Shown here: piece by piece, positions 2-61,420 of the stretch
Position numbering within the stretch: the first letter of the stretch is position 1
How the letters are laid out: each line of letters opens with the position of its first letter
IMG/VR virus record: IMGVR_UViG_3300047321_000238
Span: 124,001-188,000 of that record
DNA length: 64,000 bases
Direction: 5' to 3' (one strand)
The notes under the pieces: model-generated
Seen by the model: only the letters and a program-made list of their open reading frames with translations
What the model was told of the DNA's origin: nothing
Databases searched by the model: none
Translations under genes and position numbers: made by a program

Positions 2-601
2 ATGAATACAAGCAATTTAGTGCCAATGGTTATAGAAAGAGAAGGTAACTCTGAAAGGGCAATGGATTTAATCAGTAGAATGATGAAAGACAGGATTATA
101 TTTCTTAATGGAGAAGTAAATGATATGTCAGCAAATCTATTAGTATCACAACTAATATTTTTAGAAGCAGATAGCCCAAACCAACCAATAACAATGTATA
201 TCAACAGTCCAGGTGGTTCAGTTACTGCAGGACTTGCAATCAAAAATACAATGCATTACGTAAAAAGTCCAGTATGGACAGTAGGAATGGGAATGTGTGC
301 CTCTATGGGAGCATTCTTACTAGCGTCAGGGGAGCCAGGACATAGATCGGTATTGCCAGATACAACGGTAATGATACATCAAGTATTAGGTGGTGCAGAA
401 GGACAAGTTACCGATATGAAATTAAGAGTAGAATTTGCAGAAAGTCTTAAGATTAAATTAAATAAATACCTTTCACAATATACACAAGGAAAAGTAGACT
501 ATGATACAATGGTAGCTCTGTGTGAAAGAGATAATTTTTTAACAGCTGAAAAAGCGTTAGAATTAGGATTAATAGATGAAATAGTAGAAAAACAAGTATA
601 A
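2..601 (+). CDS. clpP: ATP-dependent Clp protease proteolytic subunit
   Basis: YINSPGGSVTAG, GMCASMG (catalytic Ser), MIHQ (His), RDNF (Asp). Confidence 0.96.
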   Translation: MNTSNLVPMVIEREGNSERAMDLISRMMKDRIIFLNGEVNDMSANLLVSQLIFLEADSPNQPITMYINSPGGSVTAGLAIKNTMHYVKSPVWTVGMGMCASMGAFLLASGEPGHRSVLPDTTVMIHQVLGGAEGQVTDMKLRVEFAESLKIKLNKYLSQYTQGKVDYDTMVALCERDNFLTAEKALELGLIDEIVEKQV

Positions 602-616
602 GAGGAGGCATAACTA

Positions 617-1873
617 ATGAGTAATGAAAAGAAAATTTGTGGATTTTGTGGCAAAACAGAAGGAGCAATGATAAGAGGAGTTTCTAGTTTTATATGCTTC
701 GATTGTTTAGGGATTTGTAATGAAAAAATCAAAGGCGTAAAATCTAAAGGAAAACAATTAAAGCTTATAGCTAATTTAAAGCCATCAGCTATTAAAAATA
801 TGTTAAACGAGTACGTAATTGATCAAGATATTGCTAAGGAAAAATTAGCAGTAGCTATTTATAATCATTATAAGATGAATAAGTACTTTGATGAACATGA
901 TGGCAATCCACCAATCGAGATTGAAAAATCTAATGTAATTTTACTAGGTCCAACAGGTTCAGGTAAAACACATATAGTTAAGACATTAGCAAAAGAATTA
1001 GGGATTCCACTTGGAATTGCAGATGCTACTGGATTAACTGAAGCAGGATACGTTGGAGAAGACGTTGAAAATTGTATAAGAAAGTTAATTGAAAATGCAG
1101 ATGGAGACGTAGAAAAAGCAGCTAGAGGAATAATCTATATAGATGAAATCGATAAGATTTGCCGTAAAGGTGAAAATGTCTCTGTTTCAAGAGACGTATC
1201 TGGAGAAGGAGTTCAACAAGCTCTATTAAAATTAGTTGAAGGTACGATTGCAGAAGTTCCACCAAAGGGAGGAAGAAAGCATCCAGATCAAGAATGTATT
1301 AAGATTGATACATCAAGAATACTATTTATAGTAGGAGGATCTTTTGAAGGTATAGAAAAAACTATAGCTAAAAGAAAACAAGGTAAATCTACTATGGGAT
1401 TTGGTTCTAAAATAGTAGATACAAAGAAAGCTGAATTTAATGAATACATCCACGATGTAGTTGTTGATGATATAAAGAAGTTTGGAATGTTACCTGAATT
1501 CTTAGGAAGATTCCCTGTTATAGCTACACTGAATGAATTGAATGAAGAAGCTTTAATTAAAATATTAACCGAGCCAAAAAATTCTTTAGTTAAGCAATAT
1601 ACAGAACTATTAAAGATGGATTCAATCGATCTTATTATTGAACCTGGAGCACTTGCAGCAATAGCACATAAAGCTATTGAAAGAAAAACTGGTGCAAGAA
1701 GTTTAAGAGCAATAGTAGATGAAAAATTACTAGACTACATGTACAAGTTGCCAGATGATGAGTTGGCAGACACGATTACTATAACAAAAGAAGTAATTGA
1801 AGAAAATGCAGAAGCTGTTATAACTCATAGAGAACCAACACCAGAAGAAGAAATTGAACAAATAGCAGAATAA
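617..1873 (+). CDS. clpX: Clp protease ATP-binding subunit ClpX
   Basis: N-terminal C4 zinc finger (CGFC...CFDC), Walker A GPTGSGKT, GYVGEDVE, Walker B IYIDEIDK, RDVSGEGVQQALLK, GRKHP, MGFG loop. Confidence 0.96.
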   Translation: MSNEKKICGFCGKTEGAMIRGVSSFICFDCLGICNEKIKGVKSKGKQLKLIANLKPSAIKNMLNEYVIDQDIAKEKLAVAIYNHYKMNKYFDEHDGNPPIEIEKSNVILLGPTGSGKTHIVKTLAKELGIPLGIADATGLTEAGYVGEDVENCIRKLIENADGDVEKAARGIIYIDEIDKICRKGENVSVSRDVSGEGVQQALLKLVEGTIAEVPPKGGRKHPDQECIKIDTSRILFIVGGSFEGIEKTIAKRKQGKSTMGFGSKIVDTKKAEFNEYIHDVVVDDIKKFGMLPEFLGRFPVIATLNELNEEALIKILTEPKNSLVKQYTELLKMDSIDLIIEPGALAAIAHKAIERKTGARSLRAIVDEKLLDYMYKLPDDELADTITITKEVIEENAEAVITHREPTPEEEIEQIAE

Positions 1874-12636: not shown

Positions 12637-12858
12637 ATGGAGTTATTAGATTATATAAAACAAATTCAAATCATAACTCCAAAGCCTGGAGACATTGTAA
12701 TTGTAACAGTTGAAGAAAACATTACAGACAATGTAACAGAACAATTAGCTAAGTGTTTAGTTAGTGAATTCAATGATAGAGGATTGACTAAAGACAACAT
12801 ATCAGTAATTTTATACAAAGGTGATGTAAAGCTTAATGTTATAAGAAAGGAAGAATAG
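12637..12858 (+). CDS. Small protein with ME[LI]L N-terminal tag (MELLDYI)
   Basis: SD AGGAG; starts 1 nt after the upstream stop. Confidence 0.75.
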   Translation: MELLDYIKQIQIITPKPGDIVIVTVEENITDNVTEQLAKCLVSEFNDRGLTKDNISVILYKGDVKLNVIRKEE

Positions 12859-16657: not shown

Positions 16658-17362
16658 ATGGAACTATTAAAACTAAAAGAACAAATTGATACTAGACTTC
16701 CAGCAGGAGATATGTCTGGAATAAAATTAAGAGAATGTAATTGGTCTGTTAAAACAGCGGGCCCTAGTCCAGATGATAATAATAGAACTGAGTTGTTCTT
16801 CCTTGGATGTAAAAAAGCTTTTAATGGCAATCCATGCAAGGGTTGTTTTAATAGTTCAACATGGGATGAATCAAAAGCTCTATGGACGCATGATCCAATT
16901 CTAATGGCAAAACATATTAATAACAATTCACCTAATAAGTATATAACTATAGGTGGAGGAGAACCAACAGACCAAATAAGAAATTTAATTATTTTATGTA
17001 AAGAATTGAAAAAGTATAATTTTCATATTATGATATATACATGGAGAGAATTGAAAAATCTTATCATAAAAGAATATGAATATAAATTAGATCCATATTC
17101 TTTTCAATTTGAAATATATGAATTATTAAAATATATAGATATGGTTGTAGATGGTCAATTTAAAGAAGAAGAACGCTTATGGGATGGTTCTAAAGAAGAT
17201 GGACTAATAAGTTCAGTAGGCTCAGGGAATCAAATCATATGGGACATAAGAAATAATTTAGGATATAGTATGAGAGATTTAAAAGGAATTAAATTAGCAA
17301 AAAATAATGATTTAATTTATTTAGCAAAAAATAAAAATATAGAAAAAATTAATTTATATTAA
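16658..17362 (+). CDS. Radical SAM protein, NrdG/activase-like, with MELL N-terminus
   Basis: CX8CX2C cluster motif, ITIGGGEP, DMVVDG.F, GSGNQ. Confidence 0.8.
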   Translation: MELLKLKEQIDTRLPAGDMSGIKLRECNWSVKTAGPSPDDNNRTELFFLGCKKAFNGNPCKGCFNSSTWDESKALWTHDPILMAKHINNNSPNKYITIGGGEPTDQIRNLIILCKELKKYNFHIMIYTWRELKNLIIKEYEYKLDPYSFQFEIYELLKYIDMVVDGQFKEEERLWDGSKEDGLISSVGSGNQIIWDIRNNLGYSMRDLKGIKLAKNNDLIYLAKNKNIEKINLY

Positions 17363-20353: not shown

Positions 20354-20878
20354 ATGGAAATATTAAATTATATAAATGCTAACAAGCATGAATTCAATGA
20401 AGATTATATGAAGAACAATGCAATTCATAAATCATTAGAAGAATTAAAAGAGTATCTAAAATTACACGCTACATTCTTAAGTAGACCTATATATTGTATA
20501 TATGAATGCTATGATCCAGAAGAAGAAGATGGTTGTTATATAAATATAAATTATTTAACTAATCATGCAGAAGGCCATTTGACAGATGATTATGAAACTG
20601 ATGCAGAAAATAATTTCTTTAATAGCTTACCATGCATAGATGAAGTAACAGAATCAACTTTTGGAATGCAAGGTTTATATAAAAATAAAGACAGAGAACA
20701 TATGACTGTAGATAGTAGAGGTCAAATTACGTATATAGATGTTGACTACTATGAACTTACAAAGAAAGAAGAAATCTGGTATCTTAAAAAGGTTATAAAA
20801 ATACTTTGCGAGTATCCAGCATTTCAAGTGTTAGAATCTCCATGGCATGAAGAAGAACATGAATATGATGATGATTAG
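20354..20878 (+). CDS. Acidic hypothetical protein with MEIL N-terminal tag (MEILNYI)
   Basis: ATG 20354 in frame with track ORF 20327; start chosen by the shared tag; no SD. Confidence 0.7.
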   Translation: MEILNYINANKHEFNEDYMKNNAIHKSLEELKEYLKLHATFLSRPIYCIYECYDPEEEDGCYININYLTNHAEGHLTDDYETDAENNFFNSLPCIDEVTESTFGMQGLYKNKDREHMTVDSRGQITYIDVDYYELTKKEEIWYLKKVIKILCEYPAFQVLESPWHEEEHEYDDD

Positions 20879-21993: not shown

Positions 21994-23922
21994 ATGGACG
22001 TAACTAAACAAGATATACTGGATGGACTGAATAATGAACAACAGTTGCCAGTAGCTGATTATCTAGGTGCTCAATTTATAGTTGCTGGACCAGGATCAGG
22101 TAAGACGCATGTTATAGTTAGTAGAACACAATATATGATATTAGACGGATTAAATCCGTCTAATTTTCTTATATTTACATTTACTAATAAAGCTGCAAAA
22201 GAAATAAAGAAGAGAATTGCAAATGCAATAGGAGAAGATTTAGCATCTAGAATAACTATGGGAACATATCATAGTTTCTGTTGCAGAATGCTTAGACAAT
22301 ACGTAAGCAAAGATGAAGATAATTTTATATTAGGGTTTGATAGAAATTTTTCTATATTCGATATGGATGATTCTAAGAAGGTTAGAAATAAAGTTAAAGA
22401 TGATACTATTGATGAAAGAAAATTAGCTGACTATATAAGTAAGAAAAAACATAAGATGATATCTCCGAGCGAAGCTATGAAGAACATTGACGATCCATAT
22501 GCTAAATTCTATGATTTATATCAAGATGAGTTATATAATCAAAATGCAATGGACTTTGATGATTTAATATTTAATTGTATTAGGTTGCTAGAAATGTATC
22601 CTAATATAAAAGAAAAGATAAATAATAAATATAAGTATATTAGTAGTGATGAATATCATGATAGTAGTTCTGCAGATATAAGATTAATTCAATTACTTTC
22701 AGGTGAAGATTGCAATGTTTGTTTTATCTTAGATGATAACCAAAGTATATATTCTTTTAGAGGAGCAGACTTACAAGCAGTGTTAAATATAAGAAACTTA
22801 TTTCCTGAACTTAAGACATTCTTCTTAAATCAAAATTATAGAAGCACCAACATGATAGTTAATGCTAGTAAGAGTTTAATCAAAAAGAATGCTAACCAAA
22901 TAGAAAAAGAAATCTTTACAGAAAATGTTGAAGGTGATCCTGTCATATATATTCAAGAAGCTGATCCAAGTTATGAAGCTTTAAGAGTTGTTAAGACAAT
23001 TGCATTGGTTAAGAAAAAATATGGATATAGTTATAATGATATAGCTGTACTATATAGAACTAGTGCTCAATCAAGAGCTGTTGAAGAAATGCTATTAAAA
23101 TATGATATGCCTTACGAGGTATTAAGTGGAGTGAATTTCTTTGAAAGAAAAGAAATAAAAGATATAGTTTCACTTATTTGTGTCGTATCTAATAGATTTA
23201 ATGTAGAAAGATTCACTAGAGTAGTTAATATACCTAAACGTGGTATAGGCCCAAAGACTATAGAGAAAATCATTGATGAATCAAGAAGTGATTTAATTCA
23301 TTCAGATTTAATCACTGCATGTAAAGATGTATTGGACAAACCATCTAAAGAAGGTGGACTAACTGGTAAAGCTAAAGAAGGAATAGCTCAATTCGTTGAG
23401 TTAATAGATAATATAAGAAATGTAATGGACGATTTAACATTGCCAGAACTATTAGCTTATGTTATTAAAGAAACTAACTATTATGAATATCTTCAAGCAG
23501 ACGATCCAGAAAAATATGAAGATAGGATGGGTAATATAGTTGAATTAGTTCAATTATCTTATACGTATGGTAGTTTAGAAGAATTCCTAGAAAAAGCATG
23601 CCTTGATAGAAAAACCAACGAAGAGGAAGAAGACAGAGTCCAATTACTAACTATGCATATGAGTAAAGGATTAGAATGGAAATGTGTTTTCATAATTGGT
23701 GCAAATGAAGGAACGTGTCCTCACGCAAGATCATTAGCTTTTGAATCGGCATTAGAAGAGGAACGTAGATTGTTCTATGTTGCGATGACGAGGGCCGAGA
23801 AGAACTTATTTATATTAAGACCAAAGAGAGTAATGTTTAATGGATTCTTCACAACAGCAAGGCCATCAAGATTTATTTCTGAGATCAATTCTAAATATTT
23901 ATATAAAAACGAAAGTAAGTAA
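21994..23922 (+). CDS. pcrA: UvrD/PcrA-family SF1 helicase
   Basis: AGPGSGKT, FTFTNKAA, DEYHD, QSIYSFRGA, QNYRS, LLTMHMSKGLEW, EERRLFYVAMTRA. Confidence 0.92.
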   Translation: MDVTKQDILDGLNNEQQLPVADYLGAQFIVAGPGSGKTHVIVSRTQYMILDGLNPSNFLIFTFTNKAAKEIKKRIANAIGEDLASRITMGTYHSFCCRMLRQYVSKDEDNFILGFDRNFSIFDMDDSKKVRNKVKDDTIDERKLADYISKKKHKMISPSEAMKNIDDPYAKFYDLYQDELYNQNAMDFDDLIFNCIRLLEMYPNIKEKINNKYKYISSDEYHDSSSADIRLIQLLSGEDCNVCFILDDNQSIYSFRGADLQAVLNIRNLFPELKTFFLNQNYRSTNMIVNASKSLIKKNANQIEKEIFTENVEGDPVIYIQEADPSYEALRVVKTIALVKKKYGYSYNDIAVLYRTSAQSRAVEEMLLKYDMPYEVLSGVNFFERKEIKDIVSLICVVSNRFNVERFTRVVNIPKRGIGPKTIEKIIDESRSDLIHSDLITACKDVLDKPSKEGGLTGKAKEGIAQFVELIDNIRNVMDDLTLPELLAYVIKETNYYEYLQADDPEKYEDRMGNIVELVQLSYTYGSLEEFLEKACLDRKTNEEEEDRVQLLTMHMSKGLEWKCVFIIGANEGTCPHARSLAFESALEEERRLFYVAMTRAEKNLFILRPKRVMFNGFFTTARPSRFISEINSKYLYKNESK

Positions 23923-24272: not shown

Positions 24273-26102
24273 TTGATAAAAATAAAATTTTTAGATAACA
24301 ATATGTTTCTTGTTAAGTTTAACGGAAATATAGCTGGCTTTGATAATTATATCAATGTTATTACATCTAAACTTATTTATTGTGCAAAACCCAACAAAGA
24401 TAAATTAGGAGGATGGATATTTCATCACAGTAAGCTACAAGAAGTACTTAGTTATTTCAAAGATGTAGTTTATGATAATGAATACATACCTCCTATTTAT
24501 TTTAATATGGGTAAAGACATGAAACTACAGCCATATGAATATCAAAAAGAAGCTATATATTTTGCACTTCAAAATAGAGAAGCATTAATGGTATTGCCTT
24601 GTGGAAGTGGAAAAACACCAATAGCAATAGGTATTTATCTTGAAGCTATTAATAATAGTGTTATTAATAGTCAAGGATTGATTGTAGTAAAAGCTTCTTT
24701 AAAAACTCAATGGAAGAAAGAAGTTGAAAAGTTTTCTGACTTAAATGCAACTATAATACAAACTTATGCAGATAGATGTTCTAAATGGACTTCTAAGATA
24801 AAGAAGTTAGAAAAAAAATTAAAGAAACTTGATATAATCAAAGACGTAGAACAAAGGAAGTTACTTATAGCAGAAATAGCTGAACAAAATGAAGCGGCTA
24901 TAGAATCTTTCAATGCTCAATTTGATGCAGGAGATTTATTAATAGCTAATTATGAAACTTTATTAGATGAGAAAGTTTTAGAAAAAATGATTTCAAAGAA
25001 AATAGAATGTATTATATGCGATGAAATTCATTATGCTAAGACTCATTCTGCAGAAAGATCTAAAGCATTATATAAACTTAATGATGCTATAATTAAAATA
25101 GGAGCAACCGCAACTCCAATTACTAAAGATCCGAGAGACGTATATGGTATTTATAAATTTGTAAAGCCAGAACTACTTGGAGCTGTTGGTAAATTTGAAA
25201 AGAGATATGTTAGTTATGCTGGTTACGGCAGAGTAAATGGATTCAAAAATATAGATGAATTAAAAGATATAATTAGTGATAATATATTTGTTAAAACAAA
25301 AAGAGAAATAGCAGATCAATTACCAAAGCTTACAACATGGCCAATATATATTGATTTAACACCAGAACAAGTCATTAAACATGATGAGATGATGGCTGAA
25401 CTTGAAGAACTTAATACAAAAGATTTTCAAATCAGAAGTAAATGTAAATCAGAAGGTGAAGCAATGCTTAATACTGAATTACAACAAATCAATGGTAAGA
25501 TTATGGCACTGCAAACATTTGCTCAAGAGTTAACAGATAGTCCGTATCTTTTATCAACTTCAGATTCAGAATACTCACAAAGTCATGCAGATGGATTAAA
25601 CTTTCATTTAAATCCTAAATTAGATATGTGTCTTGAACTTATTGACCAAATACTTGAGTCAGAAGAAAAGGTATGTATATTTTCTAAGTTCGAAAGAATG
25701 CAACGTATACTAACTGAAGCTATTGATAAAAAGTATAACAAGAAAAACTCTAATGTAAAGATAGCATATATAAATGGAACATTATCTTCAGACCAACGAT
25801 ATATAGAAGCATATGATAAATTTAGAGATACAGATGAATATAAGATTTTATTATGTTCTGATGCAGGAGCTGAAGGATTAAACCTAAGTGAATGTAAGTA
25901 TCTAATTGAATATGACTTAGCTACATCTTACGCAATACAAACGCAAAGACAAGGTAGACTTGAAAGAGCAGATAGTATTCATAAGAATGTTATAGTATAT
26001 CAACTTATTGGTAACGATAGTTGGGATATCATACAAGAGAAGATAATTAAGAAAAAAGAAGGATTTGATTCAGACATTATAAAAAGTCTTGCCAAGAATT
26101 AA
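24273..26102 (+). CDS. SNF2-like SF2 helicase
   Basis: QPYEYQ, PCGSGKT, CDEIH, ATATP, DAGAEGLNL, QRQGRLER. Confidence 0.88.
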   Translation: MIKIKFLDNNMFLVKFNGNIAGFDNYINVITSKLIYCAKPNKDKLGGWIFHHSKLQEVLSYFKDVVYDNEYIPPIYFNMGKDMKLQPYEYQKEAIYFALQNREALMVLPCGSGKTPIAIGIYLEAINNSVINSQGLIVVKASLKTQWKKEVEKFSDLNATIIQTYADRCSKWTSKIKKLEKKLKKLDIIKDVEQRKLLIAEIAEQNEAAIESFNAQFDAGDLLIANYETLLDEKVLEKMISKKIECIICDEIHYAKTHSAERSKALYKLNDAIIKIGATATPITKDPRDVYGIYKFVKPELLGAVGKFEKRYVSYAGYGRVNGFKNIDELKDIISDNIFVKTKREIADQLPKLTTWPIYIDLTPEQVIKHDEMMAELEELNTKDFQIRSKCKSEGEAMLNTELQQINGKIMALQTFAQELTDSPYLLSTSDSEYSQSHADGLNFHLNPKLDMCLELIDQILESEEKVCIFSKFERMQRILTEAIDKKYNKKNSNVKIAYINGTLSSDQRYIEAYDKFRDTDEYKILLCSDAGAEGLNLSECKYLIEYDLATSYAIQTQRQGRLERADSIHKNVIVYQLIGNDSWDIIQEKIIKKKEGFDSDIIKSLAKN

Positions 26103-28744: not shown

Positions 28745-30064
28745 ATGGAACAAAAAACATTTATAAGTCTTATAAAAGACGGTGCTATAGAATCACAAAG
28801 TACTTATAAAATTCTTGCAAGTATTACTATTGCTCAAGCTATTTTAGAGAGTGGATGGGGTACTAGTGAATTATATCTTAAAGCAAATAATTGCTTTGGT
28901 ATAAAGTGGACAGAAGGTTGCGGATATGATAAGTATTTAAAAATCACTAAGGAGATTGTAGATGATATAGAAATAACTGTACAAGCCTATTTTAGAAAAT
29001 ATAATAGTCTTAAAGATAGTATTTTAGATCACTCTTTATTCTTACAAAAAGATAGATATAAAAATATCTTAAGTGATAGTGATTATGCATCAGTTGCTAA
29101 TAAGTTATATGCAGATGGATATAGTACAAGTCCTGAATATTCAAGTAAATTAATAATATTAATTAAACAATACAATCTATTTGATTATGATAAAAATAAT
29201 GAGAAAGAAGGCGTTACAATGACAAAATTTGCAATAGACTTTGGACATGGAGTAGGAAGCGACAGAGGAGCAGTTGGAGTTATAGCTGAAGAAACTATAA
29301 TCAATGCAGTTGGTTCTTTCGTAGTTAGTAAACTAAGAGCTCTAGGACACACAGTAGTTGAAGTTAGACCTTCAAGTGCAACAAGTGTTACAAACTCTTT
29401 ATCTCAAAGAGTATCTAAAGCAGATAATAACTATGTAGATATGTATGTTTCACTACATGCTAATGCAGGTGGTGGAGTTGGAACAGAAGTCTTCACTTAT
29501 GGTGCTAAAGAAGTACCTGAAGCAAGAAGAGTTTTAAATAACATTGTATCTTTAGGATTCACTAACAGAGGTATCAAGGATGGAAGCGACTTATATGTTG
29601 TTAAATATCCAGATGCTGTAGCAATGCTTGTAGAAGTTTGTTTTGTAGATACTCAATCTGATGTCAACAAATACAATACATTAGGTGCTGAAGCAATTGC
29701 TAATGCAATAGTAATGGGTTTATCTGGAACAATAACAGCTACAACTAAATTAGGTTGGAATCAAGATTCAACTGGTTGGTGGTACTGTACTGATATTGCT
29801 AGTAAGTCTTGCTATACTAATGCTTGGAAACAAATAGATGGAGAATGGTATAGTTTTGATGATCAAGGCTATGCAAGAAAATCTGCTTGGATTCAAGATA
29901 AAGGTCTTTGGTATTATCTACAAAGTTCATGTAAGATGGCTCATTCTGAGTGGTTATACATTAATGGCGAATCTTATTGTTTTGCTGCAAGTGGGGCATT
30001 GTACGTTAACTGCACTACTCCTGATGGCTATAAAGTGGATGCATCAGGAGCATGGATAATTTAA
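28745..30064 (+). CDS. Endolysin: GH73 glucosaminidase + Amidase_3 + cell-wall-binding repeats
   Basis: AQAILESGWG, NNCFGIK, GYSTSPEY; IDFGHG, SLHANA, LVEVCF; C-terminal W-rich repeats. Confidence 0.9.
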   Translation: MEQKTFISLIKDGAIESQSTYKILASITIAQAILESGWGTSELYLKANNCFGIKWTEGCGYDKYLKITKEIVDDIEITVQAYFRKYNSLKDSILDHSLFLQKDRYKNILSDSDYASVANKLYADGYSTSPEYSSKLIILIKQYNLFDYDKNNEKEGVTMTKFAIDFGHGVGSDRGAVGVIAEETIINAVGSFVVSKLRALGHTVVEVRPSSATSVTNSLSQRVSKADNNYVDMYVSLHANAGGGVGTEVFTYGAKEVPEARRVLNNIVSLGFTNRGIKDGSDLYVVKYPDAVAMLVEVCFVDTQSDVNKYNTLGAEAIANAIVMGLSGTITATTKLGWNQDSTGWWYCTDIASKSCYTNAWKQIDGEWYSFDDQGYARKSAWIQDKGLWYYLQSSCKMAHSEWLYINGESYCFAASGALYVNCTTPDGYKVDASGAWII

Positions 30065-30068
30065 ACAT

Positions 30069-30097
30069 TTGACAATATTATAATATCTCGATATAAT
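30069..30097 (+). promoter_or_regulatory. Consensus SigA promoter
   Basis: Perfect TTGACA-17 bp-TATAAT. Confidence 0.85.
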
Positions 30098-30150
30098 GAT
30101 ATCGTTAATGTGATAATTAAAAGTAGTTATTCTTTTTAATCATTCATTTC

Positions 30151-30180
30151 AAGACACCCGTAGTTTATGGGTGTCTTTTT
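30151..30180 (+). terminator. Rho-independent terminator
   Basis: AAGACACCC...GGGTGTCTT plus T-tract. Confidence 0.8.
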
Positions 30181-30201: not shown

Positions 30202-31344
30202 TTGTTTAATAAAATGTTTCCTCAAGAATTTATAGACAAAGTAAAGGATTCTGTTGATATGAGAAAGTTAGCAGAAGAATATACTGTGTTAGAGAAAGTA
30301 GGAAATGGTGTATATAGAGGTCCTTGTCCTCATCCAGAACATGATGATAAACATCCTAGCTTTTGTGTATGGGAAAAAAGTCAATCATGGGCCTGTTTAG
30401 TATGTCACCATGGGAAAAAGACAGATAAATTTAAAAATTACGGTTCAGATTGTATAGCTTTTATAAGATGGATTAAAAAATGTTCGATGCCAATGGCTAT
30501 AGAATTTTTAGCCAATAAATATGGAATTCCTTTACCATCAAAAAAGAATCAAAAATTACTTGATATGAAAAAAGTTTTAGCTTATAGTTACATGGATAAT
30601 TTAAAAGGACAAGCTTTAAACTATTTACTTGACAGAGGTTTATCTAAAGAAGATTGTTATGAATGGGGCATCGGTTATGATGGTCAAAAAATAATATTCC
30701 CTTTATTAGATAGATATAAAAACATATTAGGATTTACTAAGAGATGGATTGTAATGCCTGAAGACAGAGACGATAAATATAAGAATTCATCAAATAGTGC
30801 AATATTCAATAAAGGTATGTATCTTTATGGAACACATAAGTTAGATTTAGAATTTAGAGAACTTAGAATAACAGAAGGTTCAATGGATGTAATATTGCCA
30901 GATAAGTATGGAGTTAAGAATATTGTTGGAACTTTAGGAACAGCATTTACTGATGGTCATATTGAAATAATAAAACATTACAAAATGATTCCTGTATTTT
31001 GCTTTGATGGAGATCCAGCAGGACTTAAAGCTATTAATAAAAGTATATTCTTGTTAGCAGAGCAAGGCATTTATTCCAAGATATTAATCTTGCCAGAAGG
31101 AAAAGATATGGCAGATTTAGCTATGGAATTAAAAGAAGATACCGAAGCCTATATTCAAGAGCATTCAATTACTTATGGTAATTATTTAATTAGTAATGAA
31201 ATGAATAGTTACTTATCTAAAGTAAATGAATTGAAACTACTTTATTACCCAAAACTTTTAAAAATTTTAAAACAAGTACCTTCTAATGATGAACAAAAAA
31301 TCCTTAAATCTCATATTAAAAATCTAATGAATATTGATATCTAA
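30202..31344 (+). CDS. dnaG: DnaG-type DNA primase
   Basis: Zinc-binding CPHPEHDDKHPSF...CLVC, KYKNS, TOPRIM ITEGSMDV, GTLGTA, FDGDPAG. Confidence 0.9.
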   Translation: MFNKMFPQEFIDKVKDSVDMRKLAEEYTVLEKVGNGVYRGPCPHPEHDDKHPSFCVWEKSQSWACLVCHHGKKTDKFKNYGSDCIAFIRWIKKCSMPMAIEFLANKYGIPLPSKKNQKLLDMKKVLAYSYMDNLKGQALNYLLDRGLSKEDCYEWGIGYDGQKIIFPLLDRYKNILGFTKRWIVMPEDRDDKYKNSSNSAIFNKGMYLYGTHKLDLEFRELRITEGSMDVILPDKYGVKNIVGTLGTAFTDGHIEIIKHYKMIPVFCFDGDPAGLKAINKSIFLLAEQGIYSKILILPEGKDMADLAMELKEDTEAYIQEHSITYGNYLISNEMNSYLSKVNELKLLYYPKLLKILKQVPSNDEQKILKSHIKNLMNIDI

Positions 31345-31781: not shown

Positions 31782-32504
31782 TTGAATACATTAAAAGAAT
31801 TAATAGAACACATTAAAAAACATAAGGACGCCGTGATTATTATTGGTTCAGAAGTTAATAAACTTAAAACAGAATATACTACAGAAGATTTCAATGAAAT
31901 CTATAATAGAAAGAATCTTAAAAGAGCTCCCGAAAAACTATGGGACTTTTACAAAGATAATATTCTTACTGAAATCGATGATAACGATATGTACAAGCTG
32001 ATAAAAGAAATGGATTATGCATTAGTTGTTAATCAAAATATTAATAGCCCATTAAGAAGTAATGCATTTGATATTCATGGAAATGTCGATAGTTATATGT
32101 GTCCTAGATGTAAAACTATATATACGAGCGACTACGTTAATACAGAGGAAGACTTAAAGAAAGACTGTGAACTATGTGGAGCAACTATAAAACCTTCAGT
32201 GTTACTTGCAGGAGAAAGATATGATCAAGCTCAATTTGATGATCTAAAAGAGAAACTTATTGCTACTCATACTTTAATACTTATTGGTATGGATTATACA
32301 GAACAACCACTATTAGATTTAGTTGCTGATTATGGAGATATAAAAGCACAAGTAAATGCTAATGGTAATCCAGACGACCAAAAAGCTTTAGTAGTTATAC
32401 AAACAGAAGAGCAAGAATTTAATCCTAATCAAATTACATTCTGTGATTTTGTAGTAAAGGGCGATATAGAAGATTCTCTAGTCAGATTTATGAAAGAGTA
32501 TTAG
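31782..32504 (+). CDS. Degenerate sirtuin (Sir2-like)
   Basis: VNQNI, IHGN, CPRC...CELCGATIKPSVLLAGE; lacks GAGIS and the GTS motif. Confidence 0.65.
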   Translation: MNTLKELIEHIKKHKDAVIIIGSEVNKLKTEYTTEDFNEIYNRKNLKRAPEKLWDFYKDNILTEIDDNDMYKLIKEMDYALVVNQNINSPLRSNAFDIHGNVDSYMCPRCKTIYTSDYVNTEEDLKKDCELCGATIKPSVLLAGERYDQAQFDDLKEKLIATHTLILIGMDYTEQPLLDLVADYGDIKAQVNANGNPDDQKALVVIQTEEQEFNPNQITFCDFVVKGDIEDSLVRFMKEY

Positions 32505-32505
32505 T

Positions 32506-32790
32506 ATGGAGTTATTAAGTTTAGTTAATTACTTTCAAAGAGGAATTACATTAAATGAAAAACTTAATATTATTACTCAGGAAGCTCGTTATAGAATAAT
32601 TAGTAATGACTTTAAAAATGAAGTTACTATGAAAATCAAAAAAGCATTTGATGATTATAATTATTTTAATTATCGTGATAATCTTATTCCTACAGTTTCA
32701 TTTGATTTATATAAAATCAATATAGATGTAAAACAAATTGAAGCTCCATTGCATCCAAGTCTTACGGGAGGTGAAGGATGGAATTATTAA
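32506..32790 (+). CDS. ME[LI]L-tag protein, array member 1 (MELLSLV)
   Basis: ORF track; starts 1 nt after the upstream stop. Confidence 0.7.
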   Translation: MELLSLVNYFQRGITLNEKLNIITQEARYRIISNDFKNEVTMKIKKAFDDYNYFNYRDNLIPTVSFDLYKINIDVKQIEAPLHPSLTGGEGWNY

Positions 32791-33326
32791 AATATGTTCA
32801 AGAAATAGAAGAAAATATAATAACAATACCAAATGATTATGGACTTGATCCAAGTCGTATACGTAGTGGAATTTCTATTTATGGCACTGGAGGTTCAATA
32901 GTTGGCACTATGAGTAATATTGATTATCAACCTAGTGAAGACATAAGTGGGTTAATTAATACAAATCTTTCTGGTAGTATATCTCTTGCTAATACTTATG
33001 TACCTGGCGAGACAATGACGGGAAGATTAGAAGTACCTGCTTTTGATGATAGAATTATGCTTTCTGACGGTATGAGTTCAGCTTTTACAGCAGCTACTGC
33101 GTTAAGAATGGCTCCTTCTGTTTCTGAAGAGATTTTAGAAGCTATTCAAAATACAATTAGAGAAGCTATTATAGAAGAATTCAGAAGTATACGTGTTTCA
33201 CCAAGCGATACTGTTACTTATACTTATACTCCACCTAATCATATGGAATATATGACCACAAGAATAGATTTAAGAGCTGAACCAGAAACTTCAGCTCTTG
33301 ATGAACCTCCAACGGAGGATGAATAA
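32778..33326 (+). CDS. ME[LI]L-tag protein, array member 2 (MELLKYV)
   Basis: SD GGAGGTG. Confidence 0.75.
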   Translation: MELLKYVQEIEENIITIPNDYGLDPSRIRSGISIYGTGGSIVGTMSNIDYQPSEDISGLINTNLSGSISLANTYVPGETMTGRLEVPAFDDRIMLSDGMSSAFTAATALRMAPSVSEEILEAIQNTIREAIIEEFRSIRVSPSDTVTYTYTPPNHMEYMTTRIDLRAEPETSALDEPPTEDE

Positions 33327-33327
33327 T

Positions 33328-33579
33328 GTGGAGATATTAAGGTATATAAAAGATGATTATGTTTATGTTTCTATGTTAGATAGGCTAAAGAATCTTGAGA
33401 TGAAAAACAGTATGATTGAATCTCAATTATGCATATTAATGTCACAATCTAATAATTCATGGGAACACAAAATGAAAATAGATAATGCATTAGCATCTAT
33501 AACAAATGTATTCTTAGAGTTAGGCATAGATTCAAATAAACTTAATCGAATAACAGATGCTTTAAAGGAAGTATTGTAA
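33328..33579 (+). CDS. ME[LI]L-tag protein, array member 3 (GTG start, MEILRYI)
   Basis: SD GGAGGA 8 nt before GTG 33328, in frame with track ORF 33298. Confidence 0.7.
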   Translation: MEILRYIKDDYVYVSMLDRLKNLEMKNSMIESQLCILMSQSNNSWEHKMKIDNALASITNVFLELGIDSNKLNRITDALKEVL

Positions 33580-33580
33580 G

Positions 33581-33847
33581 ATGGAGATATTAAATTATAT
33601 AAATACAGAATTAACCAAACGTTTTAATAGTCCAGGAATAACACTTGCTAAAATACCATCAATAAGTAGGATGACATCTACAAATTTAACTAATGCTATT
33701 CAAAATAATTTTGAAAATAAAACATTTTATGTTGGTGATATTGTTATGAATAATGAAAATGGAAATAGAAATATGAATTTTTATATGTATAATGGAACAG
33801 AGTTTGAAATGATTACTCAAGGAGGAGGAATATATGGAATTACTTAG
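33581..33847 (+). CDS. ME[LI]L-tag protein, array member 4 (MEILNYI)
   Basis: Starts 1 nt after the upstream stop. Confidence 0.7.
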   Translation: MEILNYINTELTKRFNSPGITLAKIPSISRMTSTNLTNAIQNNFENKTFYVGDIVMNNENGNRNMNFYMYNGTEFEMITQGGGIYGIT

Positions 33848-34175
33848 TTTTTTAAATAGCTCAAGCATTGAAGATATTCCTCTGCTTGAGTTAGAATCTC
33901 AATTAAAACAATTAAAGCAAACAGTTAGGACAAACTATTTAACAGTTACTTATGGTTCAAGAATTAAACCAATTAAGTGTGTTAGAGAGTATTACTTAAA
34001 TCCACTAACTAAAAAGAAAGTACCTAAAATAAACATTGTAAATGCTTGTACTTCAATACATGGTACATTTGGCATTAAAGATTGTGCCTCCGTTGATTGT
34101 AATAGTTGTCATCGAAAGATGATAGAGAATTACTTTAATGGGGAGGCATATTTAATCAAAAATAATAAAAAATAG
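33834..34175 (+). CDS. ME[LI]L-tag protein, array member 5 (MELLSFL), Cys-rich C-terminus
   Basis: SD GGAGGAGG. Confidence 0.7.
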   Translation: MELLSFLNSSSIEDIPLLELESQLKQLKQTVRTNYLTVTYGSRIKPIKCVREYYLNPLTKKKVPKINIVNACTSIHGTFGIKDCASVDCNSCHRKMIENYFNGEAYLIKNNKK

Positions 34176-34186
34176 CAGAAAAAACA

Positions 34187-34215
34187 TTGACAAGCTATTT
34201 TTTACTATATATACT
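34187..34215 (+). promoter_or_regulatory. SigA-type promoter
   Basis: TTGACA-17 bp-TATACT upstream of hup. Confidence 0.8.
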
Positions 34216-34252: not shown

Positions 34253-34528
34253 ATGAATAAAAACGAATTAATATCATCAATGGCAGACAAGAGCAAATTA
34301 TCAAAGAAGGATGCTGAATTAGCATTAAAAGCTTTGATAGAAACAGTTGAAGAAACTTTAGTAAATGGGGACAAGGTTGCATTAGTTGGCTTTGGAACAT
34401 TTGAAACTAGAGAAAGAGCTGCTAGAGAAGGAAGAAATCCTAGAACTAAGGAAGTTATAAACATTGCTGCATGTACTGTTCCTGTATTTAAAGCTGGTAA
34501 GGATTTCAAAGATAAGGTTAATAAATAA
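34253..34528 (+). CDS. hup: Histone-like protein HU
   Basis: MNKNELI, LVGFGTFE, AAREGRNPRT, VPVFKAGK. Confidence 0.95.
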   Translation: MNKNELISSMADKSKLSKKDAELALKALIETVEETLVNGDKVALVGFGTFETRERAAREGRNPRTKEVINIAACTVPVFKAGKDFKDKVNK

Positions 34529-34684: not shown

Positions 34685-34709
34685 AAGAGCACGATATGTG
34701 CTCTTTTTT
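34685..34709 (+). terminator. Rho-independent terminator
   Basis: AAGAGCAC-5-GTGCTCTT plus T-tract. Confidence 0.75.
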
Positions 34710-37666: not shown

Positions 37667-37870
37667 ATGGATTTTGAAAAAGGTATGACCTATGAAACAG
37701 AGGACAAAAAATTAGTAACCTGTTTTGAGTTAACAGAAACTTTTGCATTTTTATGTCCAATAGATTTAGATGGAAATTTAGATCTTACTAAAGTAGATGT
37801 ATATTCTACTAAAGAAGGAGTTACTCCAATAGAAACAGTTGAAGTTGCAGATAAAAATAAGGAATTATAA
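37667..37870 (+). CDS. Small acidic hypothetical protein
   Basis: SD GGAGGA. Confidence 0.65.
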
Positions 37871-37886
37871 AAGGGGGATTTTTATA

Positions 37887-38252
37887 ATGAAAGAATTAAG
37901 CACAATTCAAAAAAGAGAAAAATTAAACAAAGTATTAGCTATTGATGAAATAGGGCCAGGAGGAGCTAATCATGAATATTTGATAGTTTCAGATAGTGGA
38001 TTACAAGTACCTAAAGAAACAAAGATTCAACTTCAAAAAGGACCTAGAAAAGAAGCAGATTCTATCAATGGTGTAATTGATACTGACTTATTAGAAATAG
38101 TAAGAGATAGATTAAAAGCTTTCCAAGCTGGACCTTTTTCATCAAGAGAAAATGCATGTGCTTTAACTCATATAGAAGAAGCGTTAATGTGGATGAATAG
38201 AAGAGTTGAAGATAGAATTGAAAGAGATGTTTTGGGAAGGAATGAAAAATAA
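37887..38252 (+). CDS. tad1: Tad1-family Thoeris anti-defence sponge protein
   Basis: [77 protein letters not shown] closely match the C. botulinum prophage Tad1 as I recall it; SD AGGGGG before ATG 37887. Confidence 0.88.
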
Positions 38253-38716
38253 TGAATAAATATATGGGATTTAAATTATTAGAAGCTGAACCAATGACTC
38301 TTGGTGATTACAACAAGATGAAAGGATGGACGATTCCAGAAAATGAAGATCCATCGAAAGAAGGTTATGTTGTAAAATATTCAGATGATTATATTAGCTG
38401 GAGCCCTAAAGATGTATTTGAAGCATCTTATTTGCAAGTTAAAAATAATCCTAATCTTGCTAGTGGAGTTTCTGTTAGTCAAGAAATGGTTGATAACTTT
38501 ATTAAAGAAGTTTATGTACAAACAATTGGAACAAAAACAACTTTAGTTAGAGTTGAATTATCAAATGGATTTGAGATAGTAGAATCAAGTTCATGTGTAG
38601 ATGCAGCTAATTATAATGAAACTATGGGAAAAGAAATATGCTTAGAAAGAATAAAAAACAAAGTATGGGAATTGCTTGGTTTCTTATTACAAACAGCATA
38701 TAAAGGCATAAAGTAA
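38252..38716 (+). CDS. Two-domain phage protein: AEPM...SWSPK domain + N4 gp49/Sf6 gp66-like domain
   Basis: YMGFKLLEAEPM...EGYVVKY...SWSPKDVFEASY; LSNGF...SSCVD..NYN..MG.EIC...K.W..LGFLL. Confidence 0.65.
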   Translation: MNKYMGFKLLEAEPMTLGDYNKMKGWTIPENEDPSKEGYVVKYSDDYISWSPKDVFEASYLQVKNNPNLASGVSVSQEMVDNFIKEVYVQTIGTKTTLVRVELSNGFEIVESSSCVDAANYNETMGKEICLERIKNKVWELLGFLLQTAYKGIK

Positions 38717-51338: not shown

Positions 51339-51506
51339 ATGGAAATATTAAAACACTTACAAGACGTAGAAAAGGAAATTGAAAAAGAATGGACTGAGAT
51401 ATTATTTTACCGTGTGTGGAGAAGATATGGATACACTACTGGAACTGAAGTTGTAATAGGTAGAAATGGAACTAAATACACAGCAATATCAAGAGATAAA
51501 GAATAG
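51339..51506 (+). CDS. ME[LI]L-tag protein (MEILKHL; 55 aa, below track cut-off)
   Basis: SD AAGGAG; open frame to TAG 51504-51506. Confidence 0.7.
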   Translation: MEILKHLQDVEKEIEKEWTEILFYRVWRRYGYTTGTEVVIGRNGTKYTAISRDKE

Positions 51507-51701
51507 ATGGAAATATTAAAATACTTACAAGATTTAAAAGAAGAAGAGATGACACTTCCATATATAAAATATGAAGGTGATACTTTAACAAAAGAAATAT
51601 TTGATAAGATGATAAGCTCTTTAGGAATTCCTAGTCATCTGCTTAATATTGAGCCAGCAATACCAAGAAGTTACAGTAGAGGAAGAAGAGGAGGTCAATA
51701 A
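51507..51701 (+). CDS. ME[LI]L-tag protein (MEILKYL)
   Basis: ATG directly after TAG. Confidence 0.7.
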   Translation: MEILKYLQDLKEEEMTLPYIKYEGDTLTKEIFDKMISSLGIPSHLLNIEPAIPRSYSRGRRGGQ

Positions 51702-52175
51702 GTGGAATTACTTAATTATGTAAATAACATGTATGAGTTTATGGCATTAGGATCCATGGAGAACAAAACAGAAGCTAATATTAAAGAACATATCATATGC
51801 TTCTTTAGTAATGACTATGACAAGTCATGGTGTTCTAACATAAATACAAACATGCCATGCATAACAGAAGCAGAAATAGAAGATGAGTTGTATAACTTAA
51901 ACATATTAATAGCTTATGAGACTTATATAGTAAATAATGGCGGACGTAATTGTGCCTTTTGTTTATTCAGACATAAAGTAACTAGAGAATACTATTATCT
52001 TAAATGCGATATAGATTCAGCTCATGGATTTGAAGGTTATTTTATATTAAACAAATTAGAGAAACTATCTGAGATGTTACCTATAGATGTAAGTGAATCA
52101 TCACAAGCTAAAGCAACTGAAGTAAAAGAAAAGATAAGAGATTATATAAGAGAATATGTTCCTATGCGTGATTAG
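51702..52175 (+). CDS. ME[LI]L-tag protein (GTG start, MELLNYV)
   Basis: SD GGAGG; GTG directly after TAA. Confidence 0.75.
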   Translation: MELLNYVNNMYEFMALGSMENKTEANIKEHIICFFSNDYDKSWCSNINTNMPCITEAEIEDELYNLNILIAYETYIVNNGGRNCAFCLFRHKVTREYYYLKCDIDSAHGFEGYFILNKLEKLSEMLPIDVSESSQAKATEVKEKIRDYIREYVPMRD

Positions 52176-57070: not shown

Positions 57071-57352
57071 ATGGAAATATTAAAAAGTATCGAAGAAATA
57101 CGAATAGCTAACTGTATAAAGCAAGCTATTGAAGATGGAAAACTTGTTCCTAATGGTAAAAACTTAAGTCGAATTAAGAAACAACTAAGAGAAGAACATG
57201 GACTAATCTTTTTAAATATCATAAGTTCATCAAGGAATGGCCTGCAAGTAATGGCTAAGACAAAAAGTTATAGTTATACATATAATTATAATGGAGATGT
57301 GAAAGAAATAAGTTTAATAGGAGGAATAAGAAAGAATGTTAGTACTAACTAG
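57071..57352 (+). CDS. ME[LI]L-tag protein (MEILKSI)
   Basis: SD AAGGAGG favours ATG 57071. Confidence 0.7.
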   Translation: MEILKSIEEIRIANCIKQAIEDGKLVPNGKNLSRIKKQLREEHGLIFLNIISSSRNGLQVMAKTKSYSYTYNYNGDVKEISLIGGIRKNVSTN

Positions 57353-61114: not shown

Positions 61115-61420
61115 GTGGAAATTTTAAGTAGTATTAACTACGGCAGATGTTTGAATTATCATAATGTGCACGAAGAATGTGATTTATGTTGCTGTGAGTG
61201 CACCAGCAGATGTGATAAGTGTTGTAAGATAATTAATCATTTGGATAATAGGCATGATTGTGGGAACTTCTATAACGTAGTTGACTTCCATAATAAACTA
61301 TTAAAGCAAACTCTTTTCATTAAAGAGGAAATGAAAAGACTCAATGATACTAAAAAGAGATTTGCACAAAGAGATTTAGGCACAATACAAATCATAAAAA
61401 AGATAACAAAAGAAAGGTAG
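61115..61420 (+). CDS. ME[LI]L-tag, Cys-rich protein (GTG start, MEILSSI)
   Basis: SD AGGAGG 7 nt before GTG 61115. Confidence 0.65.
   Translation: MEILSSINYGRCLNYHNVHEECDLCCCECTSRCDKCCKIINHLDNRHDCGNFYNVVDFHNKLLKQTLFIKEEMKRLNDTKKRFAQRDLGTIQIIKKITKER

What the first reader, a model, noticed from the sequence alone, without database searches (positions are those of the whole stretch)
32506..34175. Tandem five-gene array in which every gene carries the ME[LI]L tag
Seen: five consecutive, tightly coupled ORFs (94, 182, 83, 88 and 113 aa) between the degenerate sirtuin and the hup promoter. All begin with the tag but have unrelated bodies. Inference: a hypervariable cassette locus where new payloads are added behind a common leader, like T4 internal-protein or anti-defence hotspots. 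Shared 5' sequence could also promote cassette exchange by recombination.
Basis: partly seen in the sequence, partly recalled or inferred. Interest (0 to 1): 0.7.

Follow-up and report, generated by a model that had tools for sequence, protein, structure and literature searches.

The report
Shared N-terminal tag on phage ORFans
A 248-kb jumbo phage starts about one gene in eight, including these five neighbours, with the same short peptide (Met-Glu-Leu/Ile-Leu-x-Tyr-Ile-Asn) on otherwise unrelated, fast-changing small proteins, which looks like a common address label whose reader is still unknown.

Summary
Five tightly coupled + strand ORFs (94, 182, 83, 88, 113 aa) between a Sir2-like gene and hup all start ME[LI]L. 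The tag is longer than reported, M-(0-2 aa)-E-[LIV]-L-x-[YHF]-[IV]-[NQ]-x-hydrophobic. It is genome-wide: 32-40 of about 326 genes carry it, always at residues 2-4. I found 26 strict matches against 0.23 expected.

With the tag trimmed, the bodies show no similarity by BLASTP or profile comparison. In three closer relatives the orthologues keep the tag. Their bodies are 47-72% identical where the flanking genes are 91-96% identical. Synonymous changes accumulate inside the tag and amino-acid changes do not, so the constraint is on the peptide.

The Sir2-to-hup interval holds 1-5 genes across relatives. Synonymous divergence jumps from 0.00 to 0.66 within one gene, which indicates recombination, but the breakpoints lie inside gene bodies, not at the tags.

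The genes sit in a sigma70-type operon with the primase. No T4-type head protease was detected.

My best reading is a common N-terminal recognition handle on a duplicated, rapidly diversifying accessory gene set. The phage's own ClpXP is the most concrete candidate reader, and this is untested. The T4 internal-protein analogy fits in form but is unproven in mechanism.

The parts
32506..32790 (+). g1, 94 aa, tag MELLSLVNY. Present in the 95% relative (61% aa identity over 70 aa) and absent from the 83% relative.
32778..33326 (+). g2, 182 aa, tag MELLKYVQE. Very acidic (pI 4.2, net charge -19). Only one homologous cluster (51% identity) found among 5.8 billion proteins.
33328..33579 (+). g3, 83 aa, GTG start, tag (M)EILRYIKD. 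Orthologues are 71-75% identical in close relatives and 39% in the 83% relative.
33581..33847 (+). g4, 88 aa, tag MEILNYINT. The low-confidence model shows an N-terminal helix (residues 2-15), a disordered linker and a small beta unit. The central body is replaced in relatives.
33834..34175 (+). g5, 113 aa, tag MELLSFLNS. Conserved Cys/His protein (C49, C72, C89, C92, H93 invariant) found just upstream of hup in most relatives examined. Confident model with no fold neighbours.
32506..32532 (+). Tag codons 1-9 of g1. The equivalent 27-nt stretches begin at 32778, 33328, 33581 and 33834.
30069..30097 (+). Perfect sigma70-type promoter match (TTGACA, 17 nt, TATAAT) ahead of primase, Zn-ribbon gene, Sir2 and g1-g5. 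No terminator-like site occurs before the end of g5.
30202..31344 (+). DnaG-type primase, first gene of the operon. Used as the anchor to find relatives.
31782..32504 (+). Sir2-family gene directly upstream of g1. Its stop is 1 nt before the g1 ATG.
34187..34215 (+). Near-perfect sigma70-type promoter match (11 of 12) for hup, 12 nt after the g5 stop.
34253..34528 (+). hup (HU family), the downstream boundary of the variable interval. A terminator-like hairpin follows at 34685-34705.
51339..52175 (+). A second tandem trio of tagged ORFs in the window (55, 64 and 157 aa; MEILKHLQD, MEILKYLQD, (M)ELLNYVNN) between the DNA polymerase and a methyltransferase-like gene.
12637..12858 (+). Further tagged ORF in the window (73 aa, MELLDYIKQ). 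Other tagged ORFs lie at 20354-20878, 57071-57352 and 61115-61420. ORF 16658-17362 (radical SAM) starts MELL but does not fit the rest of the motif.
2..601 (+). Phage ClpP (CLP_protease, E 4.7e-61), part of the candidate reader.
617..1873 (+). Phage ClpX with a zinc ribbon, a GYVG pore loop, an RKH loop and an MGF docking loop. Candidate reader of the tag (inference only).

Best explanation
Shown:
- The five ORFs are real genes. They appear to be co-transcribed from a host-type promoter together with the primase, and they are translationally coupled.
- They belong to a genome-wide set of about 32-40 small, mostly orphan proteins that all begin with the motif M-(0-2 aa)-E-[LIV]-L-x-[YHF]-[IV]-[NQ]-x-hydrophobic. 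This is a two- to three-turn amphipathic helix.
- The motif is held by selection on the peptide, not on the RNA or DNA.

Inferred:
- The motif most likely works as a common N-terminal recognition handle. It presents many different effector bodies to one reader.
- The set grew mainly by tandem duplication of small genes. The 24-nt module still shows marks of common descent.
- Afterwards the bodies diverged under relaxed or diversifying selection, and segments were replaced by recombination with related phages. The handle was kept.
- The most concrete candidate reader is the phage's own ClpXP. In that case the tag would be an N-terminal degron or delivery signal that limits the lifetime of early accessory proteins. 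I put the chance that the tag is a handle for some common reader at roughly 0.45.
For: Exclusive N-terminal position and enrichment: 26 strict matches against 0.23 expected, all at residue 2-4. One internal match occurs in relative G001.

Peptide-level constraint:
- Between this phage and the 95% relative, tag codons 2-9 of g2-g5 have pS 0.29 and pN 0.064. The bodies have pS 0.42 and pN 0.25.
- Orthologous tags show synonymous swaps (TTA/CTC, GAG/GAA, ATA/ATT, TTA/TTG) and only conservative changes at the core positions.
- Synonymous codon choice for I, Y, N, K, H, Q and V in the 32 tags follows genome usage.
- Offset variants (MI-, MR-, MA-, MT-, MSV-ELL...) keep the peptide but shift its distance from the AUG.

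Diverse bodies: no BLASTP or hhalign similarity once the tag is trimmed. The two structure models differ: g5 is a mixed alpha/beta Cys/His protein, while g4 is a helix, a linker and a small beta unit.

Fast evolution: 47-72% aa identity against 91-96% in the flanks, and dN/dS 0.28-0.65 against 0.07-0.17.

Duplication origin:
- Tandem clusters of 14, 5, 3 and 3 tagged genes, with a recognisable paralogue family inside the largest.
- Ser at tag position 5 is always AGT (7 of 7), and codon 3 is NTA in 29 of 32 tags.
- 56% of tagged genes lie within 3 nt of the upstream gene, against 23% of untagged genes.

Candidate reader:
- ClpP and ClpX are encoded in the same window, and the zinc ribbon, pore, RKH and ClpP-docking loops are visible in ClpX.
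- ClpX is known to recognise short degrons at the extreme N-terminus, bound in its axial channel (PMC12723719).
- The substrates of jumbo-phage ClpX and ClpP are an open question (PMC7824862).
Against: - No reader has been identified. The one complex prediction (ClpX zinc-binding domain dimer plus g4) returned 'no answer' and counts neither way.
- ClpX is conserved in relatives that carry few or no such tags, so its presence does not explain why the tag expanded in this lineage.
- Residue 2 of the tag is acidic. From my memory of Flynn et al. 2003, the published E. coli N-motifs feature basic or polar residues there.
- In g5 the tag helix is ancestral to the family and is modelled as helix 3-9 of a confident fold. 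In at least one carrier it may therefore be structural rather than a free signal.
- The pN/pS contrast rests on 32 codons.
- Genes outside the array were called with a crude home-made caller.
Confidence: 0.45

Rival explanations
1. Capsid or virion targeting, as for T4 internal proteins. The tag would direct diverse small proteins into the prohead so that they are injected with the DNA, for example as anti-defence factors.
For: - The form is the same as the T4 capsid targeting sequence: a short N-terminal sequence shared by otherwise diverse, fast-evolving small proteins in a polymorphic locus (PMC3012670).
- The bodies here are orphan and fast-evolving, and the locus varies in content.
- An Acb2/Tad1-like anti-defence gene lies 3.7 kb downstream, so the neighbourhood carries counter-defence functions.
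Against: - The array sits in a sigma70-type operon with primase and Sir2, inside the + strand replication block. It is not in the head module, which is on the - strand at genome 38-48 kb.
- Nearly all tagged genes lie in that + strand block.
- No Peptidase_S77 or S78 match was found. The S77 search had no positive control, so that absence is not proven.
- No conserved cleavage motif follows the tag.
- Forty packaged species would be many.
Confidence: 0.15
2. A diverged multigene family with no common reader. All carriers would descend from one small gene by tandem duplication, and the N-terminal helix is simply the slowest-evolving structural element of a shared, now unrecognisable fold.
For: - Tandem arrays, similar sizes (median 107 aa) and marks of common descent in the tag DNA.
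- Seven members of the 68.6-72.6 kb cluster are still recognisable paralogues.
- Bodies diverge so fast that similarity would be lost quickly.
- Relatives have their own smaller sets with a local N-terminal consensus.
Against: - No profile similarity beyond the tag (maximum 2.6%).
- Lengths range from 42 to 208 aa. Several carriers are Cys-rich, one is a highly acidic, probably disordered protein, and g5 belongs to an older family with its own confident fold.
- One carrier (189 aa, genome 48824-49393) has an orthologue in G001 that lacks the tag, and the alignment starts only after it. The tag was therefore gained by a pre-existing gene.
- A purely structural helix would not be expected to stay near-identical on such different bodies.
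Confidence: 0.25
3. A nucleic-acid element rather than a peptide. Candidates are a translation-initiation or termination-reinitiation module at the 5' end of the mRNA, a binding site for a translational repressor, or a DNA repeat that serves as a crossover point for cassette exchange.
For: - Tagged genes are unusually often coupled to the upstream gene (gap of 3 nt or less in 56% against 23%, p 7e-5). In five cases the upstream stop codon lies inside the tag.
- Some nucleotide-level regularities exist: NTA at codon 3, AGT-only Ser, and excess GAG.
- The array is a recombination mosaic.
Against: - Synonymous sites in the tag drift at about the same rate as elsewhere, while replacement sites are held.
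- The offset variants move the motif 3-6 nt from the AUG.
- No Rfam match.
- DNA repeats are at most 27 nt at 85% identity.
- Inferred breakpoints lie inside gene bodies, not at the tags.
- No joints between tags appear in the two public runs, although those are contigs and cannot show rare forms.
Confidence: 0.1

Closest known systems
T4-type internal proteins with the capsid targeting sequence (IPI, IPII, IPIII and their polymorphic locus in T-even phages)
   Same: A short conserved N-terminal sequence on otherwise diverse, rapidly evolving small proteins. The genes are clustered in a locus whose content differs between related phages (PMC3012670).
   Different: Here the tag is on about 12% of all genes, scattered over the early and replication block. 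The array is transcribed with the primase from a sigma70-type promoter. No T4-type prohead protease and no cleavage motif after the tag were found. Packaging is untested.
ClpX N-terminal degrons (N-motifs 1-3, e.g. the lambda O tag)
   Same: Short recognition sequences that work only at the extreme N-terminus. A ClpXP pair with intact functional loops is encoded by this phage.
   Different: The consensus differs, being acidic at residue 2 (from my memory of Flynn et al. 2003). No degradation data exist. ClpX is also present in relatives that have few tags.
Tandem multigene families of large DNA viruses and jumbo phages (paralogue arrays with a conserved N-terminus; recalled from general knowledge, not tested)
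   Same: Tandem arrays of small genes, lineage-specific expansion, a conserved start and divergent remainder.
   Different: Apart from one cluster, no similarity remains beyond about 10 residues. At least one carrier gained the tag on a pre-existing gene.
Start-associated sequences of cluster K mycobacteriophages, and boundary or linker sequences of mosaic phages (recalled from memory)
   Same: A repeated short sequence tied to the starts of many genes in one phage lineage. Mosaic exchange occurs in the neighbourhood.
   Different: Those are non-coding DNA or RNA elements upstream of the start codon or between genes. Here the repeat is coding, the constraint is on the peptide, and breakpoints do not coincide with it.

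Membership tests
T4-type internal proteins / capsid targeting sequence | Shared N-terminal sequence of about 10 residues on otherwise unrelated small proteins | tested here: met
   Motif present on all five and on 32-40 genes genome-wide. Bodies are unrelated by BLASTP and hhalign.
T4-type internal proteins / capsid targeting sequence | Prohead protease of the T4 type (Peptidase_S77) encoded by the phage | tested here: inconclusive
   No S77 or S78 match in the genome. The S77 search matched in none of the control genomes, so absence is not shown. Two unannotated ORFs lie between the portal and the major head protein genes.
T4-type internal proteins / capsid targeting sequence | Conserved protease cleavage site directly after the tag | tested here: not met
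   No conserved residue pattern after position 10 in the 32 carriers. Only M1, E2 and L4 are invariant columns.
T4-type internal proteins / capsid targeting sequence | Proteins present inside the virion | not testable with these tools
   No virion proteomics is available. The phage is known only from metagenomes.
ClpX N-terminal degron | Signal confined to the extreme N-terminus | tested here: met
   All 26 strict matches begin at residue 2-4 and none is internal.
ClpX N-terminal degron | A matching ClpXP protease available in the infected cell | tested here: met
   Phage ClpP (E 4.7e-61) and phage ClpX with zinc ribbon, GYVG, RKH and MGF loops.
ClpX N-terminal degron | ClpXP-dependent binding or degradation of tagged proteins | tested here: inconclusive
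   The complex prediction of the ClpX N-domain dimer with g4 gave 'no answer'. A hexamer with substrate exceeds the tool's size limit. No biochemistry is available.
Simple tandem paralogue family | Similarity among members over their full length | tested here: not met
   None among the five, or between them and other carriers. This feature is met only within a 7-member subfamily at genome 68.6-72.6 kb.
Cassette array with recombination sites (integron-like, boundary-sequence-like) | Repeats at cassette borders that coincide with exchange breakpoints | tested here: not met
   Repeats are at most 27 nt at 85% identity. The jumps in synonymous divergence fall at about codons 25 and 84 of g5 (against L057) and about codon 60 of g4 (against L099).
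Cassette array with recombination sites (integron-like, boundary-sequence-like) | Gene content of the locus differs between relatives | tested here: met
   Between 1 and 5 genes lie between Sir2 and hup in eight relatives.

The most novel reading that the evidence does not exclude
A jumbo phage marks more than a tenth of its genes, almost all of them orphan early accessory genes, with a lineage-specific N-terminal code. That code is read by a phage-encoded machine: ClpXP for timed destruction, or another AAA+ protein for delivery. Tag and reader co-evolve, so sister lineages use different codes (MELLxYIN here, MELIxxY, M[ND]ILK and MNIFDR in relatives). This would amount to a private, programmable protein-addressing system in a virus.
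Probability: 0.15. Interest if true: 0.85.

Novelty: new variant of a known kind. Interest (0 to 1): 0.62.

Why it matters
Short N-terminal address labels on phage proteins are known from a handful of T4 internal proteins. Here one label covers about 12% of a 248-kb genome and sits on its fastest-evolving, function-unknown genes.

If the label has a single reader, one pull-down or one degradation assay would assign a shared fate to about 40 orphan proteins at once. It could also give jumbo-phage ClpXP, whose substrates are unknown, its first clients.

The label would also be a practical handle, either a portable tag for directing cargo in this phage group or a sequence signature for finding accessory and counter-defence genes in related metagenomic phages.

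Separately, the array documents how such genes change. The conserved ends stay fixed, while the bodies are replaced by recombination and evolve at raised dN/dS.

Tried and rejected
- GenBank phages (blastn) and IMG/VR (single-protein scan and tag DNA pattern) gave no useful relatives. Relatives came from a primase homologue search followed by contig look-ups and from an alignment-based IMG/VR scan.
- Whole records of the ENA and Logan relatives could not be searched, so tag counts in the closest relatives are limited to the fetched pieces.
- The metagenome scan with the g5 alignment gave only two distant loci. The full 20-sequence alignment was too diverse to search with.
- Pfam, PHROGs, NCBIfam and PADLOC gave nothing for the five genes.
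- The ESM Atlas gave only weak leads. For g4 these were tail-fibre-like or Mtd_N-like small viral proteins. For g1 they were sheath-like subdomains at TM 0.57-0.60 on a pLDDT 0.61 model. I did not build on them.
- The g4 structure model was too poor (pLDDT 56) for a fold search.
- The g5 model found no neighbours in the PDB or AFDB clusters.
- The complex prediction gave no answer.
- The two public runs are contigs only, so rare deletion or exchange forms between tags could not be looked for.
- Tagged and untagged small proteins do not differ in pI, charge or hydropathy.
- Rfam found nothing.
- I rejected the idea that the tag is helix 1 of a common winged-helix domain, because no pattern is conserved after residue 10 outside one subfamily.
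Full report
**What the window is**

The window is bases 124001-188000 of a 247,883-bp IMG/VR virus record with direct terminal repeats and 30.5% G+C. The genome has - strand structural blocks at about 0-52 kb and 189-247 kb. These include the terminase, portal and major head protein at 38-48 kb. A + strand block at about 53-188 kb holds replication and accessory genes.

The window itself is the DNA-metabolism part. It encodes ClpP, ClpX, SSB, topoisomerase II, a sigma factor, a UvsX-like recombinase, helicases, primase, HU, NrdD, ligase and DNA polymerase.

**The observation**

Five + strand ORFs lie at 32506-32790, 32778-33326, 33328-33579 (GTG start), 33581-33847 and 33834-34175. They encode 94, 182, 83, 88 and 113 aa, and each begins ME[LI]L.

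They are tightly coupled to each other and to the upstream Sir2-family gene. Three junctions have the stop 1 nt before the next start. In two junctions the upstream stop codon lies inside the next gene's tag.

A perfect sigma70-type promoter match lies at 30069-30097, ahead of the primase. No terminator-like site occurs before the end of g5. A second strong promoter match at 34187-34215 serves hup, which is followed by a terminator-like hairpin. The array therefore reads as the tail of a primase / Zn-ribbon / Sir2 operon driven by a host-type promoter.

None of the five matches Pfam, PHROGs, NCBIfam or PADLOC. There is no Rfam match and no DNA repeat longer than 27 nt in the region.

**The tag is longer and genome-wide**

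Across the genome, 32 ORFs of 40 aa or more start M-E-[LIV]-L-x-[YHF..]-[IV..]-[NQ..]. Position 10 is hydrophobic in 22 of 32, which gives the pattern of an amphipathic helix.

A further 7-9 ORFs in the 69-74 kb cluster carry the same peptide shifted by one or two residues (MI-, MR-, MA-, MT-, MSV-ELL...). The strict motif occurs 26 times against 0.23 expected, always at residue 2-4 and never internally.

Carriers are small (median 107 aa) and are almost all without family assignment. They lie in tandem clusters of 14, 5, 3 and 3, plus singles. They sit within 3 nt of the upstream gene in 56% of cases, against 23% for other genes.

**Bodies**

With the first 10 residues removed, no pair among the five reaches BLASTP E<0.01, and no pair between the five and any other carrier does either. 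Only seven members of the 68.6-72.6 kb cluster are recognisable paralogues. Profile-profile comparison, using orthologue alignments where available, gives at most 2.6% probability.

- g2 is very acidic (pI 4.2).
- g5 is a conserved Cys/His protein. Its model is confident (pLDDT 85.6), with the tag as helix 3-9, and it has no fold neighbours in the PDB or AFDB clusters.
- g4 is modelled, poorly, as an N-terminal helix, a disordered linker and a small beta unit.

**Relatives**

Primase homologues define a clade of phages of about 240-260 kb.

| Relative | Primase or marker identity | Genes between Sir2 and hup | Notes |
|---|---|---|---|
| ENA contigs L013 and L057 | primase 95% | 5 | All five genes present |
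| L099 | g5 94% | at least 4 | Short contig holding g2-g5 |
| L014 | primase 83% | 4 | All tagged, orthologous to g2-g5; no g1 |
| More distant relatives | primase 47-67% | 1-4 | Only the g5 family is shared |

In the g5 family the N-terminus already has the form M-[EDN]-[LI]-[LI]-x-x-[LYF].

The tag DNA pattern hits 21 times in this genome but only 0-2 times in five complete relatives. Those relatives show smaller sets with a local consensus: MELIxxY, M[ND][IV]LK and MNIFDR. In each, the g5 orthologue follows the local form. I followed this only partly. The contrast in residue 2 between genomes is significant (p about 1e-7), but background N-terminal composition also differs between them.

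**What is under selection**

Against the 95% relative, the flanking proteins are 91-96% identical, with dN/dS 0.07-0.17. g1-g5 are 61, 54, 71, 47 and 72% identical, with dN/dS 0.28-0.65.

Within g2-g5, tag codons 2-9 have pS 0.29 and pN 0.064. The bodies have pS 0.42 and pN 0.25. Orthologous tags differ by synonymous swaps and by I/L/V exchanges at the core positions. Synonymous codon use for most tag residues follows genome usage. The constraint is therefore on the peptide.

Some features look like leftovers of common descent of a 24-nt module: Ser5 is always AGT and codon 3 is almost always NTA.

One carrier (189 aa, next to the terminase gene) has an orthologue in G001 that lacks the tag. 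The tag can therefore also be acquired by an existing gene.

**Hypervariability and recombination**

Divergence across the array is mosaic.

- Between this phage and the 95% relative, g5 codons 2-25 have pS 0.07, codons 26-83 have pS 0.66, and codons 84-113 have pS 0.00.
- L099 is 94% identical to this phage in g5. In g2-g4 it is only 60-75% identical, and it is as far from this phage as from the 95% relative there.
- Sliding-window identity drops from more than 90% to 33-60% within tens of bases.

Such jumps in synonymous divergence indicate exchange of segments with diverged relatives. The junction regions (Shine-Dalgarno sequence, tag and the next 10-25 codons) tend to be conserved islands. 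Even so, the inferred breakpoints lie inside gene bodies, not at the tags.

The public runs that hold this DNA are available only as contigs. They show a roughly 90% relative with the same conserved-island, diverged-body pattern, and they cannot reveal rare rearrangements.

**Mechanism**

The data show a peptide signal confined to the N-terminus. It sits on many unrelated, fast-evolving, mostly early-block proteins and has expanded in one lineage. I read this as a common recognition handle.

The most concrete candidate reader is the phage's own ClpXP. ClpP and ClpX are encoded in the window, and all functional loops of ClpX are visible. ClpX is known to recognise short degrons at the extreme N-terminus. 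What jumbo-phage Clp proteins act on is unknown.

This remains an inference. ClpX is also present in tag-poor relatives, and the one complex prediction was uninformative.

The T4-like capsid-targeting reading shares the form, but the operon context, the genome location and the lack of a detectable T4-type protease or cleavage motif argue against it. A purely historical paralogue family, and a nucleic-acid element, are the other rivals. The first is weakened by the diversity of the bodies and by tag gain on an existing gene. The second is weakened by free synonymous drift and by the offset variants.

**Verdict**

It is not right that the leader is specific to this locus, that the leader is a recombination site, or that the leader has been shown to be a packaging signal. 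I file the feature as a new variant of a known kind, an N-terminal address tag on diverse phage proteins, with an unknown reader.

Noticed in passing
window 2-601 and 617-1873: The phage encodes a ClpP and ClpX pair. ClpX has a zinc ribbon, a GYVG pore loop, an RKH loop and an MGF docking loop. It is conserved at 46-69% identity in five complete relatives.
   Followed up: partly
window 37839-38252 and 38252-38716: An Acb2/Tad1-hairpin protein (E 6e-10), which is a cyclic-nucleotide sponge type of anti-defence family, and an N4 gp49 / Sf6 gp66 family protein sit between NrdD and the NrdG-like activase. The same pair is present in relatives.
   Followed up: no
window 33834-34175: g5 belongs to a small family (19 representatives among 1.84 billion proteins) with invariant C49, C72, C89, C92 and H93. 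It lies next to hup in most relatives examined. The AF2 model is confident (pLDDT 85.6) and has no fold neighbour in the PDB or AFDB clusters.
   Followed up: partly
G001, G002, G003 (whole records; loci L038-L050, L071-L096): Each relative has its own weaker N-terminal consensus on a handful of small ORFs: MELIxxY, M[ND][IV]LK and MNIFDR. The g5 orthologue follows the local consensus. This could mean co-evolution with a reader, or separate founder effects.
   Followed up: partly
window 32778-32790 and 33834-33847; genome-wide: In five tagged genes the upstream gene's stop codon lies inside the tag, giving overlaps of 13-14 nt. Read one base later, the sequence ATGGAATTATTAA gives W-N-Y-stop. 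The same C-terminal WNY occurs in a relative's gene (L014, 87-aa ORF).
   Followed up: partly
L013 709-1551; L014 1560-2342 and 4438-5331; L015 3723-4634: LAGLIDADG homing-endonuclease genes sit beside or within the UvrD-like and SNF2-like helicase genes of relatives. In L014 the SNF2 gene appears split. The corresponding window genes (21994-23922, 24273-26102) are uninterrupted.
   Followed up: no
window 30069-30177: A perfect sigma70-type promoter match (30069-30097) is followed within 55 nt by a strong terminator-like hairpin (30151-30177), before the primase start. This could be the lysin gene's terminator overlapping the next promoter, or an attenuator.
   Followed up: no
L013 (end) and L056 (end): Two independent assemblies of the 95% relative break at or just before the array. 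One ends 31 nt into g1 and the other just after the primase. Low coverage or strain heterogeneity at this locus could explain both.
   Followed up: no
genome 68.6-75.7 kb (loci L052, L063, L064): The largest tag cluster consists of about 20 consecutive small ORFs. It includes a 7-member paralogue family of about 105 aa and several Cys-rich mini-proteins of 59-70 aa. None has a homologue in relative G001.
   Followed up: partly
window 28745-30064: The endolysin combines glucosaminidase, amidase_3 and choline-binding-type repeat regions in the closest relatives' annotation. This points to a Gram-positive host. Relatives carry one or two lysin genes with different domain sets at this position.
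   Followed up: no
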